From Mobula hypostoma (taxonomy: Eukaryota): 64,000 bases of DNA. The notes under the pieces are model-generated. The model made no database searches and was not told where the DNA came from. It saw nothing but the letters and a program-made list of their open reading frames with translations. The translations under genes and the position numbers were made by a program. Location: contig NC_086100.1 of the NCBI RefSeq assembly GCF_963921235.1, positions 129,022,001 through 129,086,000 on the forward strand, read 5' to 3'. Shown one piece after another: positions 16,352-32,880 of this stretch (position 1 is the stretch's first letter; every line of letters begins with the position of its first letter).

Positions 16352-16415
16352 ATGAAGAACAAGCAAATGCTGAGACCTTTTGCAGCAATTCTCCTTTTCA
16401 CTGTTCTTGTAACAG
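16352..16415 (+). CDS. JCHAIN: Immunoglobulin J chain, exon 1 (signal peptide)
   Basis: MKNKQMLRPFAAILLFTVLVT+G; 64 coding bp, phase-1 donor ACAG|GTGTGA; hydrophobic leader; human JCHAIN also starts MKN. Confidence 0.9.
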
Positions 16416-19365: not shown

Positions 19366-19492
19366 CCAATGCTGAAAGCCATCTTCTAGTTAAATCAAAA
19401 TGTAAGTGCCTGACTGTGACATCCAAAACAGTTGTTACCAAATTGCCTACTGGTGAACGTGTGGAGCAGCTTATGAGAGATATAAGAATTAT
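19366..19492 (+). CDS. JCHAIN: Immunoglobulin J chain, exon 2
   Basis: ttttatag|CC AAT...ATT AT|gtaagt; 127 bp; (A)NAESHLLVKSKCKCLTVTSKTVVTKLPTGERVEQLMRDIRI(I), matching human LVDNKCKC.R.TS...VERNIRII. Confidence 0.96.
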
Positions 19493-20395: not shown

Positions 20396-20476
20396 CGTTC
20401 CTATGAGGAGCAGAGTGAACATGTCAGATCCAACTTCCCCTATTCGGACGAAGTTCGTCTACAAGATTTCTGATTT
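20396..20476 (+). CDS. JCHAIN: Immunoglobulin J chain, exon 3
   Basis: tattacag|C...TT|gtatga; 81 bp; VPMRSRVNMSDPTSPIRTKFVYKISD versus human VPLNNRENISDPTSPLRTRFVYHLSD; N-glycosylation sequon NMS conserved. Confidence 0.98.
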
Positions 20477-23769: not shown

Positions 23770-23890
23770 CCATCCCTCTTCCTTCAGTTAGTCCTGACGA
23801 AGGGTCTCGGCCTGAAACGTCGACTGTACCTCTTCCTAGAGATGCTGCCTGGCCTGCTGCGTTCACCAGCAACTTTTATGTGTGTTGTTT
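23770..23890 (+). mobile_element. PLE 3' terminal fragment
   Basis: Near-identical to the terminus that follows the GIY-YIG-type ORF end at 36830-36966. Confidence 0.85.
23790..23825 (+). ncRNA. Minimal type I hammerhead ribozyme motif (intact core)
   Basis: Stem I AGTC/GACT, core CUGACGA, stem II AGG/CCU, GAA, palindromic ACGU in place of stem III, cleavage triplet GUC. Confidence 0.8.
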
Positions 23891-25439: not shown

Positions 25440-27420
25440 AGAGGAATTGTTTTGACATGTTCCTGTCAGAACGAAGGGCAAAAGTGACACAAACAGAGAC
25501 CCCTGGTTGACGAAGGATATCGATGCTCCAGTCAGGAAAAAGGACAATTAAGAGGCCCACATGCCAGCTGTTTATTTCCCTCCATAGATGCTGCCTGACA
25601 TGCTGAGTTCCTTCAGCATTTTGTGTGTGTTGCAGCTGGGGTCAAGCAAATCCCTAAAGGAGTACAGAGATGTAGGAGTGTAATGTAATTTTCCTTTAAA
25701 CCTATAAGGATGCAGACGTACACTGAATAGGGATATAGGAAGGGCAAAGAGAGCCTTGGCAGATAAGATAAAGGAAATTCATAACAGATTCTTTAACTAT
25801 AACAAAGCAGTAACCGAAAAGAGAGTAAGATCCCCTTAAATATCAGTGTTCATCTATGGTGGAGCCATGAGATATGGACAATGTCTTAAGTCAATAGTTC
25901 CTGTCTGTATTTACCATGGAGAAGGTCGAGCAAGCTAGGGATTTCAGGGAAGAGAGCCAGAATGTCCTGAAACATATTGCTACCATGAAGGAGAAGGTGT
26001 TAGCAGATTTAAAGGTGAATAAATCTCTGGGGCCCGACCAAGTGGACATTTTAGGAATACAGGAATTTGCTAAGGCCCTGGCAGAGGTAGATATATCAGC
26101 ATTGGGCTACAGCTGATTTTTTACCCAAAAAAAAGGCTGTAAGGACAACCCAATGAACTACAGGTGAAAAGCCAAACATCAGCAGTGGTAAAGTTACTGG
26201 AAGGAATTCCAACATACAGGACTAGCTGCGTGGGTAAAAGAGAGGACTGATTTGAAATAGGTAATATAGTTTGTGCATGGGACAGTGTGTCTCAATTTGA
26301 TTAAGTTTATTGAAAAGGAAACCAAGGGAATTGACAAAAGCAGGGCAGTAGAAGTTGTCTACGTGGACTTTCACAAGGCTTTCACAGAGGCCCTGTGTGG
26401 TAGGCTGGTCTGGCAGGTTAGATCACATGGAATCCAGGGTGAGCTAGCCAACTGGATACAGAATTTGCTTGTTGGTAGTAATCCAAAGACGGAAGTGGAA
26501 ATTGTTTTTTTTAGTTTGGAGACCAGTGAGCAGTGGTGTGCCGCAAAGATTGGCGCTGGGTTCCCTATTGCTGGCGGTTATATTATCAATTTGGATGACA
26601 GTGTTGTTGGAATAGTAAGCAAGTCTGTGGATGACACCAGAATTGGTGGCATGGTGAACAGTGAAGAAAGTTACCTAAAATCACAACAAAATCAAGATAA
26701 ACTGGGAAAATAGGCCAAGGACTGGCAGATGAAAGTGATGCATTTTGGGAAGTTTAACCAGAGTAGAACATACAGGCCAGAGGACTGGGTAGCGTAAGAG
26801 AATAAAGAGGCCGAGGGGGACAAATACATACCTCCCTGAAAGCGGTGACACAGATAAATGAGGTTGTGAAGGAGGCATTTGGGCATACTTACCTTCATCA
26901 GTCAGGACTTGGGATGTCACGTTAGAGCTGTAGAAAACTTTGAAACTGTACAGTGTGCAAATCTGGTACGTAGCTATAGACAAAATGTCATTACATTGAA
27001 GATTCACAGGGATATAACTGGGATTGGATCATGAGAAGAGAGTGGATAGGCTGGGGTTGTTTTCTCTGGCGTGTAGGAGGCCGAGGGTGACCTTTACAAG
27101 ATCACGAGGGGCAAAGATAAAATGAATGCTCCGAGCTCTTTTCCCAGGGTGAGGGGAGTCTAAAAGTAGAGGGAAAAGATTTAGTGTGAAATGACAAAGA
27201 TTTAAAGGAGGCCTGAGGATGACATTTTCCACACAGATGGCTGTGGGAATATTGAACAAGTTGCCAGAGGAAATGACAAAGGTGGGCACAATAACATTTG
27301 AAAGAAAGACAGGTACATGAATAGAAAAGGGTTAGAGGGATATGGGCAACTGAGGCTAGCTCAGGTAGGCAACATGTTTGGCCTGGACAAATTGGGGAGA
27401 AAAGAGCCTGCTTCAATGCA
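25440..27420 (+). mobile_element. Degraded CR1 LINE in JCHAIN intron 3
   Basis: ORFs 25916-26116 (LKVNKSLGPD) and 26273-26713 (AVEVVYVDFHKAF...GIQGELANWIQN); CR1 3' tail near 27330-27420. Confidence 0.88.
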
Positions 27421-27519
27421 GTAGAACTTTATAACTCCCTGAGAACACACTGTGATTTTCAGAAGACAGCATTTCAAGTGCAATGGAAATTACATCTCTA
27501 ATCAAATATTTTGTTACAG

Positions 27520-27775
27520 CTGCAAGAACTGCAACCAAGAACGAACCTTGCCTGGAGAACCCGAGTGCAAGCCCCCACCTCCTTCTGCAGATACCTGTTA
27601 CAGCCGTCCCAGCACATGCCTGCACCAAACAATCGACATGGGAAATGGCATAAAAATGGACGCTATTCAGAATCCTGAGTGTCTCAACTATAAACCAAAA
27701 CACTGGATCCCAAAGCCTACACTGACTCCTATTGAAACTACACGAGATTTTGATTCCATGTCAGATGCTCCTTAG
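27520..27775 (+). CDS. JCHAIN: Immunoglobulin J chain, exon 4 (terminal coding exon)
   Basis: ttgttacag|C TGC AAG AAC TGC, in phase with exon 3; CKNC...PECK...DTCYSRPSTCL...NPECLNY...SDAP*. The Cys pattern aligns with human CKKC/C/TCY/KCY/ACY. Confidence 0.92.
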
Positions 27776-28265
27776 GTTGTTCTTCAAAGAACTGCATTTA
27801 ATTCTTCAGAGAATGTCATTAGTACATTTTCTACTTTGACATTGTCACTTTTGCTTTTTGTCATCCCTAAACAGATCATAAAATGCTTCATAGCTTCAAA
27901 GCATGTTTTGTGCAAATCCTTTTCTTTACATTACAGCATCGTGTGCAATATGCCAATTTGCTTCTCTCTTTTGGGGACAAACAAAATTAAGCCAATGGAT
28001 AAATCTGGCAGACTACCACTTAATAAGTTTTGTACAAAAAGGAATTGCAGAAGTATATGAATATCTAGCACTGAATTCTGTGGTCAGCATGCAGCAATAA
28101 CAATAACTATTCTAGGAAATCAAAGGCAGATGATGTCTTTAGCAGTCTGACCACATTCAATAATTCTTGTAGGCAACAAAAAAGTGGTGCACTTTTTGAG
28201 AAATATTTCAAACTAAACACAGAGCAAAGCTACATTATTACATAAGCATAGTATAGGTGAAGTTT

Positions 28266-28271
28266 AATAAA
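28266..28271 (+). terminator. Candidate JCHAIN polyadenylation signal
   Basis: First AATAAA after the stop codon (about 490 bp downstream); a second lies at 28467-28472. Confidence 0.45.
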
Positions 28272-28944
28272 CATTTTTAAAATATTTCTTTCATTATTCT
28301 GGATTGCTAATATTTTCAAATACTTCACTGACAAAATCAAAATCCACAAACATAAAATTAATTCTTCATGATTAAAGAATTACTTTAGTAATAATGAAGT
28401 TTAATATCTCATTAAAGATTGGTTATAAACTTTAGTAAAAACATTTTTGCGGTATTTTGCAGTGAGAATAAAACATAAATCTTTGGTTATGAATCAATTG
28501 GTATGATCTACATTCAGATGGAGCAGAATTGAACAGTGAAGGAAGTGAAAGAGGATGTAATAATGTACAGCAACTCTCCTTTGCTCATGTCGCATTATAC
28601 AAATGCAGGAGTGCTGAAAATACCCCCAAACTCATTTCATATAAAGCAAAATCTGTCATCCTCATTGTAATAATAATGCCCTGGTTGTGAGTGGAACAGT
28701 GGAAAGAGCCTAGCCAGGAATGGTGAATGGCGAAGAAAGAGACAGGCTGAGGGAAGAGGGAGGAAGAGAAATATATATATATATTGGGCATGGAGAGGTT
28801 TGTGGAGGGGAATAAGGGTGTTGGTGGATGGGAACTCATTGGATCATTATTGCAAAATGAAGCTGAGGGCTTGAAGACCTTCCAAGTGGGGAATATAGCT
28901 GGTTAAAGACTGGGCAGCCATAGTGAAGTGGGAGTGGGAGCTGA

Positions 28945-31900
28945 TGCCACTGCTCTGCCACTAGGAGATGTGCCGGGGCTAAGGGAGTGAAACATCAGTG
29001 AGTGGTGATCCCTGGCTGATGACCTTGCAGTTGACCTAAGGGCACTGTTGGGGGTGCAGTAGGCAGCAATGCCAAGCAGGAAACATCTTCCTGTAAACAT
29101 CAATGAAACTTCTGGGTATCCAGTGACTACTGTGAAAGGGCAGTTGGAGACCAGGGAAGAGCGGAAGGCATCCAGGAAAGACTGGATGACTGCAGGAAGG
29201 TCTGCACTGAGGGTGGGTGGCTACTCACCCAACCCACTAGTTTCTTGTAGCGGAGACACCTATCAATGACTACAAAGACAAACAAGAGAAGACAACCTGA
29301 AGGACATCCAAGAGGGATGAAAAATGGCCCAAAAGGATGGATTACATGGGAGTGACCAGAACTAATACAGAAGACGAGATAAAGATCCTTCAGAAATCTC
29401 TCTTTGACATTTTAGATGTGTCCTCCACCCCGAAGACCGGCACAACATAGTCATTCAAAGCCTCTGCCTTTTCCTCATTACCCAATATCAATTCCCCTTT
29501 CTCGTCCACCAAGGGACCTACATTCACTTTAGCCACCCTTTTCTGCTTTATATAATTATAAAAACTTTTACTATCAGTTTTTATATTTTGTGCTAGTCTA
29601 TTTTCACAATCTATCTTCCCCATCTTTATTACTCACTTTGTGGTTCTTTGTTGCTTTTTGAAGTCTTCCCAATCTTCCAGTTTCCCACTAGTCTTGGTGA
29701 CTTTGTATGCAGGGTTGATGCCTTCTTTTATTTCCTTAGCTCTCCCCACCTTTACTGTCTTTGCTTTTAACTGGAATATACTTTTGTTGAGCACCGTGAA
29801 AAATCTCTTTGAAAGTCTTCCACTGTTCCTCAGCCGTCCCACCATGTAGCCTGTGTTCCCAGTCTACACTAGCCAAATCCTCCCTCATCCATTGTAGTCT
29901 CCATTGCTTAGGCATAATACACTGGTTTTAGATCAAACTATTGCACCCTCAATTTGCATGAGAAACTCAGCCATACTGTGATCACTCTTTCCAAGAGGAT
30001 CCCTAACTACAAGATCATTAATTTTACCTGTCTCGTTGCACAGGACCAGATCTTAAATAGCACATTCCCTTGTAGGTTCAGTAACACGCTGTTCAAGAAA
30101 GCCATCATGGATGCATTCTATGAAGTCCTCCTCAAGACTGCCTCGACCAACTTGATTATCCCAATCTATGTGCACGTTACCGTCCCCCATGATAAATGCT
30201 GTTGCATTCTTAAATGCGTCAGATATTTCTGTTTACTGCTTGTGCCACTGTAATGCTACTATTCAGTGACAGATAGACAACACTCACCAATGATTTTTTT
30301 CCCTTTACTATTACTAATCGCTACCCAGATTATTCAACATTCTGCTCCTTAGATCTTATATCGTCTCTATCGCCCTGATCTCATCCTCAATTAAGAGTGC
30401 TACCCCACCTCCCTTACCTTCCTGCCTATCCTTCCATATTACCTGATATCCTTGGATATTTAACTCCCAGTTCTCTCCACAGAGTGATGGGAAAGAGTGA
30501 CAAAGAGCTGTGGTGGTGCTCATCCCCAAAGAGCAGAACTACAGTTCAGGACCATTGCACTGCTGAACGTCGAGGGGAAAATCTTCTCCTCTGTTGTGGC
30601 TAAGAGGATGACCATCTACCTCATGGGCAATGGATACATTGACACCCACTGCCAGAAAGCAGGCGTTCGAGACTTCCAGGGATGCATGGCGCATGCGTCG
30701 TTGATATAGGACCAGATCAAATGAGCCAAGAGTGAGGAAGGATGTTGTGTGGCTGGATCTTGCGAATGCCCATCGATCTGCGCCTCACCAGCTCATCAAC
30801 TTTGCAATGGAGTTCTTTTACATTCCCCACTGCATTACAGGCCTGGTTTCCATTTACTTCAGTGACCTCCCGATGGGTTTCTCTTTTTGAGACTTTACAA
30901 GGGGGTGGCAGCAGTTCGAAGTAGGCATAGCAATGGGGTGTTCCATCTCTCCTACCCTGTCTGTGGCAGTCTTCGAGATCATCCTTATTGGAGCAAGGCT
31001 GATGATTGGAGGATAAAGCTGCAGTCAGGACAGAGGCTCCTTCCACTGAGGAGCTACATGGATGATGTCACAAGCACTCTGCCGCCGGCTGCATGCACAA
31101 AAAGGCTGCCGAAGAGGCTGGATGTGCTAGTGACATGGGCAAGAGTGAAGATATAAGCTCTTCAAGTCGCAAAGCCTATCCCTCAGAAAAGGGGTCAGAA
31201 GCAACTACATCACCTTTGCTGTGGGGGGTGAGGGGGGGGTGGTGCAAGGAAATCCTATTGTTGGCCAGGCAGCCCATCCAAAGCCTTGGGAGGCAGTACA
31301 TCGCAGAACACTCTGACAAGAAAATGGGAAAAGCAGCACAGAAACAGCTTGCAGAGTGCCTGGCCAGAACTGACCAGAGCCATCTACTGGGAAAGTATGA
31401 AGTGTGATGCTACCAGTTCATACTGTACCAAAGAGTGATGCGGCCCCTGAAAATGTGTAAAATTCCCTCATCAACAGCCAGCAGAATGGATGAGATAGCC
31501 ATGTCATATATTCGGAAACGGCTGGGGCTGCCTCGTGTTTCTCGGACACTGGCCTCTTTGGGAAGAACATTTTGCAGCTGCCACTGAGATCCATCAGCCT
31601 GGGGTACAAGCAGGAGAAAACCCGACTGACCGGTGTGTTGAGGGAGTCCAGTGACCCACTGGTGAGGAGTGCCAATGCCTCAATCCATACTGGCCATAAG
31701 TGGAGAGCTCAAGCTGAAGTAGACCAGGCCATCAGCAGGCTACAGCACCAAGAGGTTGTCAGCAGAGTCCAGGCTGGACTTGGCTGTAAGAAGGCAACAC
31801 ATTTATGGTCCAAGGCCTCAAAGAAAGAGAGGAAAGCCATGGTGGTGGAGGAGCTGACAAGGACAGAGCAGGAGCACAACAGGGTGAAGGGCCGTGGCAC

Positions 31901-32880
31901 AAGGCCTGCAGGGAAGATGGACAACATGGGAGCCCACCATAAACAGCTGGTCTGACCTGTGGAAGTTCCCACATGCCAGACTCTGCTTCATCAGGATATT
32001 TTGCCCTGCCCCCTAAATCTTCTCCAGTAGTTTGGGGGTAAGGATAGCTGCCCCCCCCCCCCCCGGTGTGATACCACTAATGCCAACCTCTAACACATTC
32101 TGGCAGGATGCAAGACTGCTCTGTCTCAAGGGCTCTACAGATGGTGGCACAATCAGGTCCTAGAGAAGCTGACAGAGATCCTGGGGACCTGCAGGTGGGT
32201 GCGAGAAGCAGCCTTTCCCTAGAAGGACGACAACTCATCCCACTTGTTAAGGCTGGTAAGAGCACTGAATGCAGCCGCCCAAGAGCTCTTTCAAGCCTCC
32301 TCTCCACATCAAGGAGTGGAACATGAGGGCAGATCTCGACAGACAGCTACAGTTCCTCACGGAAATCACCACCCCATCTCTCCACCCAAAGTACTCTGGT
32401 CCATGGTTGCCAACAGAGTTCTCCTTATTGAGTTAACCATCCCATGGGAGGCTGCGCAAGAGCAGAAGAAGCTGAAGTACTCAGACATGGCAGCTGAGCG
32501 TAAGGAAGCAGGCTGGAGGACCACCATATACCCTGCGGAGGTTGGATGACTGGGCTTTGTCGGTGCATCGACAACAAGGTTGCTCCATGATATGGCAGTG
32601 ACTGGAGCGAGCCTCAGGAGGGCCACCAGGGATTTGCCTGAAGAGGCAGAAATGGGCAGCTTTTGGCCATGGCTAAGGAGGAAGGACAGAAACTGGGAGA
32701 CCGCCAAACCACACTGCAGCTGCAGGGGGTCGCTGCTCTGCGTCCGGGAGATGTGCCAGGGCTAAGCAAGTGAAACATCAAAGAGCCGTGGTCCCTGGTT
32801 GACAACCCTGCAGCTGGCCCAAGGGCACTGTTGGAGGTGCGGCAGGCGGCAATGCCAAGCAGGAAACATCTTGCTGTAAA
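28945..32880 (+). mobile_element. Hero-like (R2 superfamily, RLE-type) non-LTR retrotransposon, degraded and interrupted by CR1
   Basis: RT blocks QFRTIALLNVEGKIFSSVVAKRMT, VWLDLANA, LPLRSYMDDVT; CCHC-region HILAGCKTALSQGLYRWWHNQVL; RLE VLLIELTIPWE...KKLKYSDMAAE..EAGW.TTIYPAEVG. A probable N-terminus starts at ATG 29266 (MTTKTNKRRQPEGHPRG). Confidence 0.85.
29390..30480 (-). mobile_element. CR1 LINE fragment inserted in the Hero-like element
   Basis: ORFs 29390-29623 (NIKTDSKSFYNYIKQKRVAKVNVGPL) and 29633-29845 (KLEDWEDFKKQQRTTK); endonuclease end near 30250-30480. Confidence 0.9.

What the first reader, a model, noticed from the sequence alone, without database searches (positions are those of the whole stretch)
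27520..27775. J chain with all eight cysteines and a 30-residue Pro/Thr-rich C-terminal tail
Seen: the spliced 175-aa protein has CKC, CKNC and four further Cys. After the last Cys it continues LNYKPKHWIPKPTLTPIETTRDFDSMSDAP instead of ending like human CYPD. Known: the J-chain C-terminus forms part of the pIgR/secretory-component binding surface in mammals. From recollection, the published nurse shark J chain (Hohman et al. 2003) lacked three of the eight Cys. Inference: this lineage keeps the full disulfide scaffold but adds a possibly O-glycosylated tail. That tail could block or replace the transport-receptor interface, which would point to a different mode of polymeric IgM/IgW handling.
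Basis: partly seen in the sequence, partly recalled or inferred. Interest (0 to 1): 0.75.

Follow-up and report, generated by a model that had tools for sequence, protein, structure and literature searches.

The report
Ray J-chain gene with conserved tail
This is the last exon of a devil ray's antibody joining-chain gene; its 30-residue tail is real and transcribed, but most sharks, rays and chimaeras share it, so it is an old feature of unknown function, not a novelty of this lineage.

Summary
Window 27520-27775 (+) is exon 4 of a single-copy, four-exon JCHAIN gene that encodes 175 aa. The mature protein has all eight canonical cysteines, followed by 30 residues after the last one.

Transcript contigs from four runs (two organisms, two studies) join exon 3 to position 27520. 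One contig covers the tail, the stop and the 3'UTR without a single difference.

The animal is a mobulid ray: the protein is about 98% identical to the annotated Mobula birostris 'J chain-like' protein. The tail was not added in this lineage. Its last 20 residues form the motif [KP]PTxxP[VI]ETTxDxxS[MIF]SDAP, which ends the J chains of rays, sawfish, all sharks sampled and the chimaera Callorhinchus. Tetrapod J chains all stop 2-3 residues after Cys8, and the coelacanth chain has no such motif.

The motif is a conserved island. Its mean pairwise identity is 0.64, against 0.19-0.28 for the flanking segments, and its dN/dS is 0.17-0.49. It is nevertheless dispensable: skates and a numbfish lost it through stop codons.

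The eight-cysteine scaffold is probably ancestral, and the nurse-shark-type loss is derived. The tail's function remains inferred; my best guess is a flexible, possibly O-glycosylated linker ending in a docking motif.

The parts
16352..16415 (+). JCHAIN exon 1, coding part: ATG plus the signal peptide (21 codons + 1 base), followed by a phase-1 GT donor.
   Evidence: Search for an ATG, a hydrophobic stretch and a phase-1 donor. tblastn with the spliced protein. The 175-aa product matches P0001.
19366..19492 (+). JCHAIN exon 2: start of the mature protein, with the CKC motif (Cys1, Cys2).
   Evidence: The Pfam PF15097 match on this piece is below the cutoff (23 bits against 27; E = 8.1e-05).
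20396..20476 (+). JCHAIN exon 3: the conserved block around the N-glycosylation site (NMS) and DPTSP.
   Evidence: Pfam PF15097 gives 36.6 bits on this piece alone. Its last 30 bases are the loose end of the RNA contigs at 27520.
27520..27775 (+). JCHAIN exon 4, coding part: CKNC (Cys3, Cys4), Cys5 to Cys8, the 30-residue tail and the TAG stop.
   Evidence: Covered by RNA contigs with 0 differences.
27683..27772 (+). C-terminal tail, 30 residues after Cys8. It has a variable 10-residue linker (27683-27712) and a conserved 20-residue terminal motif (27713-27772) ending SMSDAP.
   Evidence: Alignments. Segment identities. dN/dS. pLDDT is below 40 in the monomer model.
27776..28271 (+). 3'UTR. 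Contigs reach 28208-28230. An AATAAA signal lies at 28266-28271.
   Evidence: Depth falls to zero after about 28275.

Best explanation
The stretch is the terminal coding exon of the single JCHAIN gene found in this window. The animal is a devil ray (Mobula-like).

What the protein is. It is a secreted, basic J chain. The N-terminal half carries CKC, the N-glycosylated NxS-DPTSP block and CKNC, and is the conserved module that becomes disulfide-linked into polymeric IgM. The C-terminal half keeps Cys5 to Cys8, that is, the two hairpins known from tetrapod J chains.

What the tail is. After Cys8 comes an extension shared across chondrichthyans: a variable linker of about 10 residues, then a 20-residue terminal motif, [KP]PTxxP[VI]ETTxDxxS[MIF]SDAP, kept by purifying selection.

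Shown here: the gene model, transcription and splicing, the eight Cys, the distribution and conservation of the tail, and its loss in two batoid lineages.

Inferred (about 0.35): the tail is a flexible, probably O-glycosylated arm. Its conserved end would act as a short docking motif on the exposed J-chain face of polymeric IgM, contacting either the Fc itself or a chondrichthyan partner protein. It would be an accessory to polymer formation, not a requirement for it.
For: Gene model and splice phases 1-2-2. These match the JCHAIN/CXCL rule in PMC10801876.

Homology:
- E = 4.6e-50 to M. birostris J chain-like protein.
- PF15097 gives 84 bits for the 98%-identical P0001 and 36.6 bits for the window's exon 3.
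- PDB J chains match at E = 1e-15 to 1e-20.

Transcripts: the exon 3/4 junction is seen in four runs, and one contig is identical over 27520-28230.

Cysteines: all eight Cys fall in the tetrapod columns. A BLASTP alignment of the Heptranchias and caecilian proteins runs through to just before Cys8.

Tail distribution: the motif is present in 12 of 15 chondrichthyan species sampled, counting the window. P, T, P, D, S, D, A and P are invariant.

Tail conservation: mean pairwise identity is 0.64 for the motif, 0.19 for the linker and 0.28 for the Cys6-Cys8 segment. dN/dS of the motif is 0.17-0.49 while dS is 0.5-0.9.

Absence elsewhere: the tail is absent in all tetrapod hits and in coelacanth. 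In the 1.84-billion-protein search only the elasmobranch cluster representative matched over the full profile including the tail; Callorhinchus matched in two stretches and no non-chondrichthyan reached past profile position 141.

Accessory role: the tail is lost in skates and Narcine. In mammals, deleting hairpin 3 still allows pentamers to form (PMC11729874).

Charge: the mature protein has pI 8.8, as reported for cartilaginous-fish J chains.
Against: No direct evidence bears on what the tail binds, whether it is glycosylated, or whether it survives in the mature protein.

The AlphaFold monomer model is poor (mean pLDDT 51; tail below 40), so it says only that the tail is not predicted to fold alone.

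The dN/dS values rest on 20 codons and three species.

Two independent losses in batoids show that selection on the tail can be relaxed.

The tail matches no family in Pfam or the PDB.
Confidence: 0.8

Rival explanations
1. The tail is a functionless leftover. It would be an unconstrained extension that persists only because chondrichthyan genomes evolve slowly.
For: It was lost by a stop codon in skates and by a stop plus indels in Narcine, while J chain expression or annotation persists. The post-stop remnant in skate is still readable, which shows slow decay. It is predicted to be disordered.
Against: The motif is far more conserved than the adjacent coding segments of the same exon (0.64 against 0.19-0.28). 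Synonymous sites in the motif are heavily substituted (dS 0.5-0.9) while dN/dS is 0.17-0.49. Eight positions are invariant from chimaera to rays.
Confidence: 0.1
2. One reading: this lineage added the tail to a full-Cys J chain, and the tail blocks or replaces the pIgR/secretory-component interface.
For: The tail starts directly after Cys8. In mammals, the hairpin closed by this Cys is needed for binding of pIgR and secretory component (PMC11729874).
Against: The tail is shared with lineages that lack Cys2 and Cys8, and with Callorhinchus, so it is not a lineage addition. No pIgR homologue is known in cartilaginous fish.
Confidence: 0.03
3. The tail mimics an immunoglobulin heavy-chain secretory tailpiece and adds a strand to the tailpiece beta-sandwich of the polymer.
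For: There is a superficial resemblance to the human mu tailpiece: KPTL at the start and MSD.A near the end. The tailpiece string was verified in the literature.
Against: Shuffle tests give p = 0.07-0.66 across seven species. Neither the tail nor its profile retrieves any Ig heavy chain from the PDB, even at E up to 10. The conserved prolines and the missing penultimate Cys argue against a tailpiece-like strand.
Confidence: 0.05
4. The tail is a pro-segment or quality-control tag that acts only inside the plasma cell and is removed or irrelevant in secreted IgM.
For: Mammalian J chain is an unstable, late-folding protein whose incorporation is kinetically controlled (PMC11729874). A conserved C-terminal peptide could serve that step.
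Against: There is no dibasic or other obvious processing site in front of the motif. No data are available either way.
Confidence: 0.1
5. The tail is an assembly or annotation artefact, such as a wrong stop or a wrong exon.
For: None found.
Against: An RNA contig is identical to the genome across the exon, the stop and the 3'UTR, and the junction is seen in four runs. The same 175-aa architecture is found in independent genomes.
Confidence: 0.01

Closest known systems
Predicted 'immunoglobulin J chain-like' proteins of Mobula birostris (P0001), Hypanus sabinus (P0002) and Pristis pectinata (P0003)
   Same: Length of 175-176 aa, eight Cys and the same tail. P0001 differs from the window product at 4 of 175 residues.
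   Different: They are automatic annotations only. No publication on batoid J chain was found in the library.
Nurse shark J chain (Hohman et al. 2003) and other galeomorph shark J chains (Rhincodon P0011, Hemiscyllium P0015, Scyliorhinus, Mustelus, Cetorhinus)
   Same: The same N-terminal half, a basic protein, and the same terminal motif ending S[IF]SDAP.
   Different: Galeomorphs have CKL instead of CKC (no Cys2), lack Cys8, and have a shortened or diverged Cys7-Cys8 region. The ray keeps all eight. I could not read the Hohman paper itself. The statement that three Cys are missing in nurse shark is from memory; Tacchi 2013 as read names only Cys3 and Cys6 as missing or not conserved in shark.
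Mammalian and tetrapod J chain (PDB 6KXS, 6UE7, 7K0C, 9EC7 and others)
   Same: Four exons, the CxC and CxxC motifs, the N-glycan block, eight Cys in the same order and a similar spacing for Cys5 to Cys8.
   Different: Tetrapod chains are acidic and end 2-3 residues after Cys8. The ray chain is basic (pI 8.8), has a shorter Cys4-Cys5 hairpin, and carries 30 extra residues. The Pfam model aligns only to residues 25-99.
Skate J chain (Raja eglanteria cDNA protein P0008; Amblyraja radiata P0007)
   Same: Batoid J chains that are nearly identical up to Cys6.
   Different: They are truncated by TAG right after Cys6 (122 aa), so they lack Cys7, Cys8 and the tail. The old frame is still readable downstream.
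CXCL chemokine genes, the proposed ancestors of JCHAIN (PMC10801876)
   Same: Four exons, intron phases 1-2-2, a signal-peptide boundary at exon 1/2, a CxC motif in exon 2, and a basic protein.
   Different: There is no detectable sequence similarity, and the disulfide pattern differs. No CXCL exon was recognised in this 64-kb window.

Membership tests
Immunoglobulin J chain (JCHAIN, Pfam PF15097) | Match to the family profile above the curated cutoff. | tested here: met
   Window exon 3 alone scores 36.6 bits (cutoff 27). Exon 2 scores 23 bits. The 98%-identical P0001 scores 84.1 bits over residues 25-99. Exon 4 alone gives no Pfam match.
Immunoglobulin J chain (JCHAIN, Pfam PF15097) | Four coding exons with intron phases 1-2-2 and the signal peptide ending at the exon 1/2 boundary (PMC10801876). 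| tested here: met
   Exons are at 16352-16415, 19366-19492, 20396-20476 and 27520-27775, all GT-AG, with phases 1, 2 and 2. The cleavage site was not predicted with a dedicated tool.
Immunoglobulin J chain (JCHAIN, Pfam PF15097) | CxC motif in exon 2 and CxxC at the start of exon 4. These cysteines link to the heavy-chain tailpieces or start incorporation. | tested here: met
   CKC and CKNC are present.
Immunoglobulin J chain (JCHAIN, Pfam PF15097) | Eight conserved cysteines of the tetrapod scaffold. | tested here: met
   All eight fall in the tetrapod columns of the MAFFT alignment. The disulfide pairing itself is not testable here.
Immunoglobulin J chain (JCHAIN, Pfam PF15097) | Conserved N-glycosylation sequon in the N-I-S-D-P-T-S-P block. 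| tested here: met
   NMS is at residues 72-74, followed by DPTSP.
Immunoglobulin J chain (JCHAIN, Pfam PF15097) | Transcribed and spliced as modelled. | tested here: met
   The exon 3/4 junction is seen in four runs, and an identical contig covers exon 4 plus the 3'UTR. The tissue of the runs is unknown.
Immunoglobulin J chain (JCHAIN, Pfam PF15097) | Linkage to a CXCL chemokine cluster. | tested here: inconclusive
   No CXCL-like CxC exon was recognised in the window. A 64-kb window is too short to judge.
Immunoglobulin J chain (JCHAIN, Pfam PF15097) | Covalent incorporation into polymeric IgM. | not testable with these tools
Chondrichthyan J-chain C-terminal extension (defined here) | About 30 or more residues after the last Cys, ending in [KP]PTxxP[VI]ETTxDxxS[MIF]SDAP. 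| tested here: met
   Window 27713-27772 reads the motif with every invariant position kept.

The most novel reading that the evidence does not exclude
The conserved terminal motif of the chondrichthyan J-chain tail is the docking site for a still unknown partner of polymeric IgM in cartilaginous fish, such as a transport, clearance or effector receptor, or a serum protein. In that case J chain's role as a receptor handle, together with the Cys7-Cys8 hairpin used by pIgR in mammals, would predate pIgR. Tetrapods would have swapped the tail for the hairpin-pIgR interface. Skates and numbfish, which lost the tail, would be natural knock-outs.
Probability: 0.15. Interest if true: 0.7.

Novelty: new member of a known kind. 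Interest (0 to 1): 0.33.

Why it matters
The current picture of 'the shark J chain' is a poorly conserved C-terminal half with missing cysteines and a role only in polymerisation. That picture rests largely on the nurse shark.

The ray gene, read together with sawfish, stingray, numbfish and sevengill-shark sequences, shows that the full eight-cysteine scaffold exists in cartilaginous fish. This includes the hairpin that mammals use for pIgR. The scaffold is therefore probably ancestral to jawed vertebrates, and the nurse-shark state is derived.

The work also defines a short C-terminal motif that is strongly conserved from chimaera to rays. Its function is unknown, and there are natural loss-of-tail lineages for comparison.

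This is useful for anyone who models or solves a cartilaginous-fish IgM polymer, but it is an incremental comparative-immunology point, not a new kind of system.

Tried and rejected
- **Pfam on exon 4 alone:** no family.
- **PDB search with the 30-residue tail:** nothing at E up to 10.
- **PDB search with a 13-sequence tail profile:** only a chance hit to an RNA polymerase subunit, E = 2.3.
- **Tailpiece-mimicry idea:** shuffle tests were not significant.
- **AlphaFold2 monomer with a 12-sequence alignment:** mean pLDDT 51. It is usable only to say that the tail is not predicted to fold, so no fold search was run on it.
- **Complex prediction:** not run, because no ray or shark IgM heavy chain could be obtained with the tools, so the relevant pair could not be built.
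- **DNA of other loci:** the Mobula, Hypanus, Cetorhinus, Mustelus, Scyliorhinus and Hemiscyllium loci could not be fetched. dN/dS is therefore limited to the window, Pristis and Heptranchias.
- **Papers not held:** Hohman 2003, Castro and Flajnik 2014, Castro 2013, Flowers 2021 and the PNAS 2024 datasets.
- **Second JCHAIN copy or duplicated exon 4 in the window:** none found.
- **CXCL neighbour in the window:** none recognised.

Full report
**1. The observation**

Window 27520-27775 (+) follows a good splice acceptor. From 27521 it reads CKNC, then four further Cys, then 30 residues and a TAG stop at 27773-27775.

I located the rest of the gene with motif and ORF scans:
- Exon 2 (19366-19492) carries the CKC motif.
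- Exon 3 (20396-20476) carries the N-glycosylation/DPTSP block.
- Exon 1 (16352-16415) is a 64-nt ATG/signal-peptide exon.

All introns are GT-AG with phases 1-2-2. The spliced CDS is 528 nt and encodes 175 aa. tblastn of the product against the window finds only these four pieces, so there is one copy and no duplicated exon 4.

The mature protein has eight Cys. It is basic (pI 8.8) and has one sequon, NMS. The tail (27683-27772) has 5 Pro, 4 Thr and 2 Ser in 30 residues.

**2. It is a real, expressed gene**

Exon 4 alone matches a 175-aa 'immunoglobulin J chain-like' protein of Mobula birostris (98% identity, E = 4.6e-50) and one of Hypanus sabinus (81%). The whole window product differs from the M. 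birostris protein at 4 of 175 residues. The genome is therefore a close mobulid relative, in line with another agent's 'devil-ray' label for this genome.

Pfam Ig_J_chain scores 36.6 bits on window exon 3 alone, and 84 bits on the M. birostris protein. It aligns only to residues 25-99. The C-terminal half lies outside what the tetrapod-dominated model recognises (exon 4 alone gives no hit).

I laid the contigs of four public runs (two coded organisms, two studies) on 26000-28700. All four have contigs that begin to fit exactly at 27520. The preceding unaligned letters equal the last 30 bases of exon 3.

One 1083-nt contig in run X1 fits 27520-28230 with zero differences, and 346 nt of it lie upstream of the junction. 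That length is what exons 1-3 plus a short 5'UTR would give. No joint lies inside exon 4, and coverage stops near the AATAAA at 28266.

None of them occurs.

**3. The tail is not special to this lineage**

A full-length search and a profile search returned J chains of 14 further chondrichthyan species and about 50 tetrapods.

Every tetrapod protein with a normal C-terminus ends 2-3 residues after Cys8, as CY[PSA]D or similar. The coelacanth protein (identified) ends 12 unrelated residues after its last Cys. The lungfish entry in the library is partial.

By contrast, twelve chondrichthyans share the ending [KP]PTxxP[VI]ETTxDxxS[MIF]SDAP:
- the window, Mobula, Hypanus and Pristis;
- Heptranchias and Pristiophorus;
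- Cetorhinus, Mustelus, Rhincodon, Hemiscyllium and two Scyliorhinus species;
- the holocephalan Callorhinchus.

P, T, P, D, S, D, A and P are invariant. In an exhaustive profile search of 1.84 billion cluster representatives, only 16 clusters matched. Only the elasmobranch representative matched over the full profile including the tail; Callorhinchus matched in two stretches, and no other hit reached past profile position 141.

**4. The motif is a conserved island**

Mean pairwise identity across 13 tail-bearing sequences, by segment:

| Segment | Mean pairwise identity |
|---|---|
| Last 20 residues (motif) | 0.64 |
| 10-residue linker after Cys8 | 0.19 |
| Cys6-Cys8 segment | 0.28 |
| Exon-2 part (Ig-binding) | 0.61 |
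| Exon 3 | 0.84 |

I made codon alignments of exon 4 from the three genomes whose DNA I could fetch with an intact tail: the window, Pristis (L004) and Heptranchias (L005). For the motif, dN/dS is 0.17-0.49 with dS of 0.5-0.9. For Cys6-Cys8, dN/dS is 0.47-1.04. The numbers are small, but conservation is not merely a result of slow mutation.

**5. The tail is nevertheless dispensable**

In Amblyraja radiata, exon 4 has a TAG directly after Cys6. The annotated product is 122 aa, the same length and ending as the cDNA-derived Raja eglanteria protein. The former frame is still readable downstream, including a recognisable remnant of the motif.

In Narcine bancroftii all eight Cys are kept, but the Glu codon of the motif is a TAA. 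Further downstream there are indels, with a remnant of the ending.

These are two independent losses within batoids. They fit the mammalian result that hairpin 3 is not needed for pentamer formation, whereas the CxC and CxxC cysteines are (PMC11729874).

**6. The cysteine scaffold**

| Lineage | Cysteines relative to the tetrapod eight |
|---|---|
| Window, Mobula, Hypanus, Pristis, Narcine, Heptranchias | All eight present |
| Galeomorph sharks | Lack Cys2 (CKL) and Cys8 |
| Pristiophorus | Lacks Cys3 |
| Callorhinchus | Lacks Cys3, Cys7 and Cys8 |
| Skates | Lack Cys7 and Cys8 through truncation |

The Heptranchias protein aligns with a caecilian J chain by BLASTP all the way to just before Cys8, including a CY.Y[DN]..KC block. 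The homology of the C-terminal hairpins is therefore real.

By parsimony, the eight-Cys scaffold predates the split between chondrichthyans and osteichthyans. The literature I could read generalises from the nurse shark. It speaks of poor C-terminal conservation, a 'unique' elasmobranch C-terminus, and a function in polymerisation only (PMC4279169; PMC10801876; PMC3743840). I found no paper on batoid J chain.

**7. Mechanism**

Shown: the gene encodes a secreted J chain with the conserved Ig-joining module plus the tail.

Inferred: the tail is flexible. Its pLDDT is below 40 in a model that is poor overall. The invariant P-T-x-x-P core fits the proline pattern that favours mucin-type O-glycosylation; this rests on general knowledge and was not tested. 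The invariant acidic ending looks like a short linear docking motif.

The tail starts at Cys8. In mammals that residue closes the hairpin which is exposed on the polymer and used by pIgR. The tail should therefore project from the J-chain face of the IgM polymer. Whether it folds back on Cmu4 or recruits another protein cannot be decided here.

No pIgR homologue has been found in cartilaginous fish (PMC4016189).

**8. Ideas rejected**

- Tailpiece mimicry: the tail starts KPTL and contains MSD.A, like the human mu tailpiece, whose string I verified in the literature. Shuffle tests give p = 0.07-0.66. The tail profile retrieves no Ig chain from the PDB.
- Artefact: excluded by the RNA contigs.
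- Neutral leftover: unlikely, given.

**9. Verdict**

This is an ordinary, correctly read JCHAIN orthologue. Near-identical proteins are already in public annotation. The tail is genuine but ancient and shared across chondrichthyans.

Three points have modest value:
- the full Cys scaffold is ancestral;
- the terminal motif is sharply conserved, yet was lost twice;
- the lineages that lost it are natural knock-outs for testing its function.

Interest is about 0.33. I class it as a new member of a known kind.

Noticed in passing
L001:19725-19950; further copies at L001 23131, 25015 and 28408, and L002 10002, 13750 and 17168: In Amblyraja radiata, JCHAIN exon 4 occurs in at least seven tandem copies, mostly about 3.4-3.7 kb apart. 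All carry the same premature TAG after Cys6, and some have further stops. Two annotated gene models use different copies and give the same 122-aa protein.
   Followed up: partly
L003:16460-16540: In Narcine bancroftii JCHAIN, the tail motif is interrupted by TAA at the Glu codon. It then decays by indels but still ends in a remnant of the old terminus. This is a loss of the tail independent of the one in skates, seen in a single assembly.
   Followed up: partly
P0005 residues about 24-36 (Heptranchias perlo): The predicted Heptranchias J chain has 11 extra residues at the boundary between the signal peptide and the mature protein. No other species has them. This may be a mis-called exon 1 donor in the annotation.
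   Followed up: no
window 27196-27347 and 27054-27087 (intron 3): Short stretches of intron 3 fit the inside of many unrelated RNA contigs at 90-95% identity, with loose ends on both sides. They are therefore copies of a dispersed, transcribed repeat (SINE-like). An ORF resembling a reverse-transcriptase fragment lies at 26270-26710 (+).
   Followed up: no
window 26000-27549: One contig of run X3 (1946 nt, low depth) runs unspliced from intron 3 into exon 4, and a shorter one in X2 does the same. This is either pre-mRNA of a heavily transcribed gene or DNA carry-over.
   Followed up: no
window 28068, 28092, 28094, 28171 (3'UTR): Runs of coded organism B differ from the window at four 3'UTR positions, while organism A is identical. 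B is therefore another individual or a close sister species with the same J-chain exon 4.
   Followed up: no
window 23790-23825 and 28945-32880: Other first-reader notes on this window report a minimal hammerhead ribozyme in JCHAIN intron 3 and a Hero-like retrotransposon just downstream of the 3'UTR. I did not examine either.
   Followed up: no
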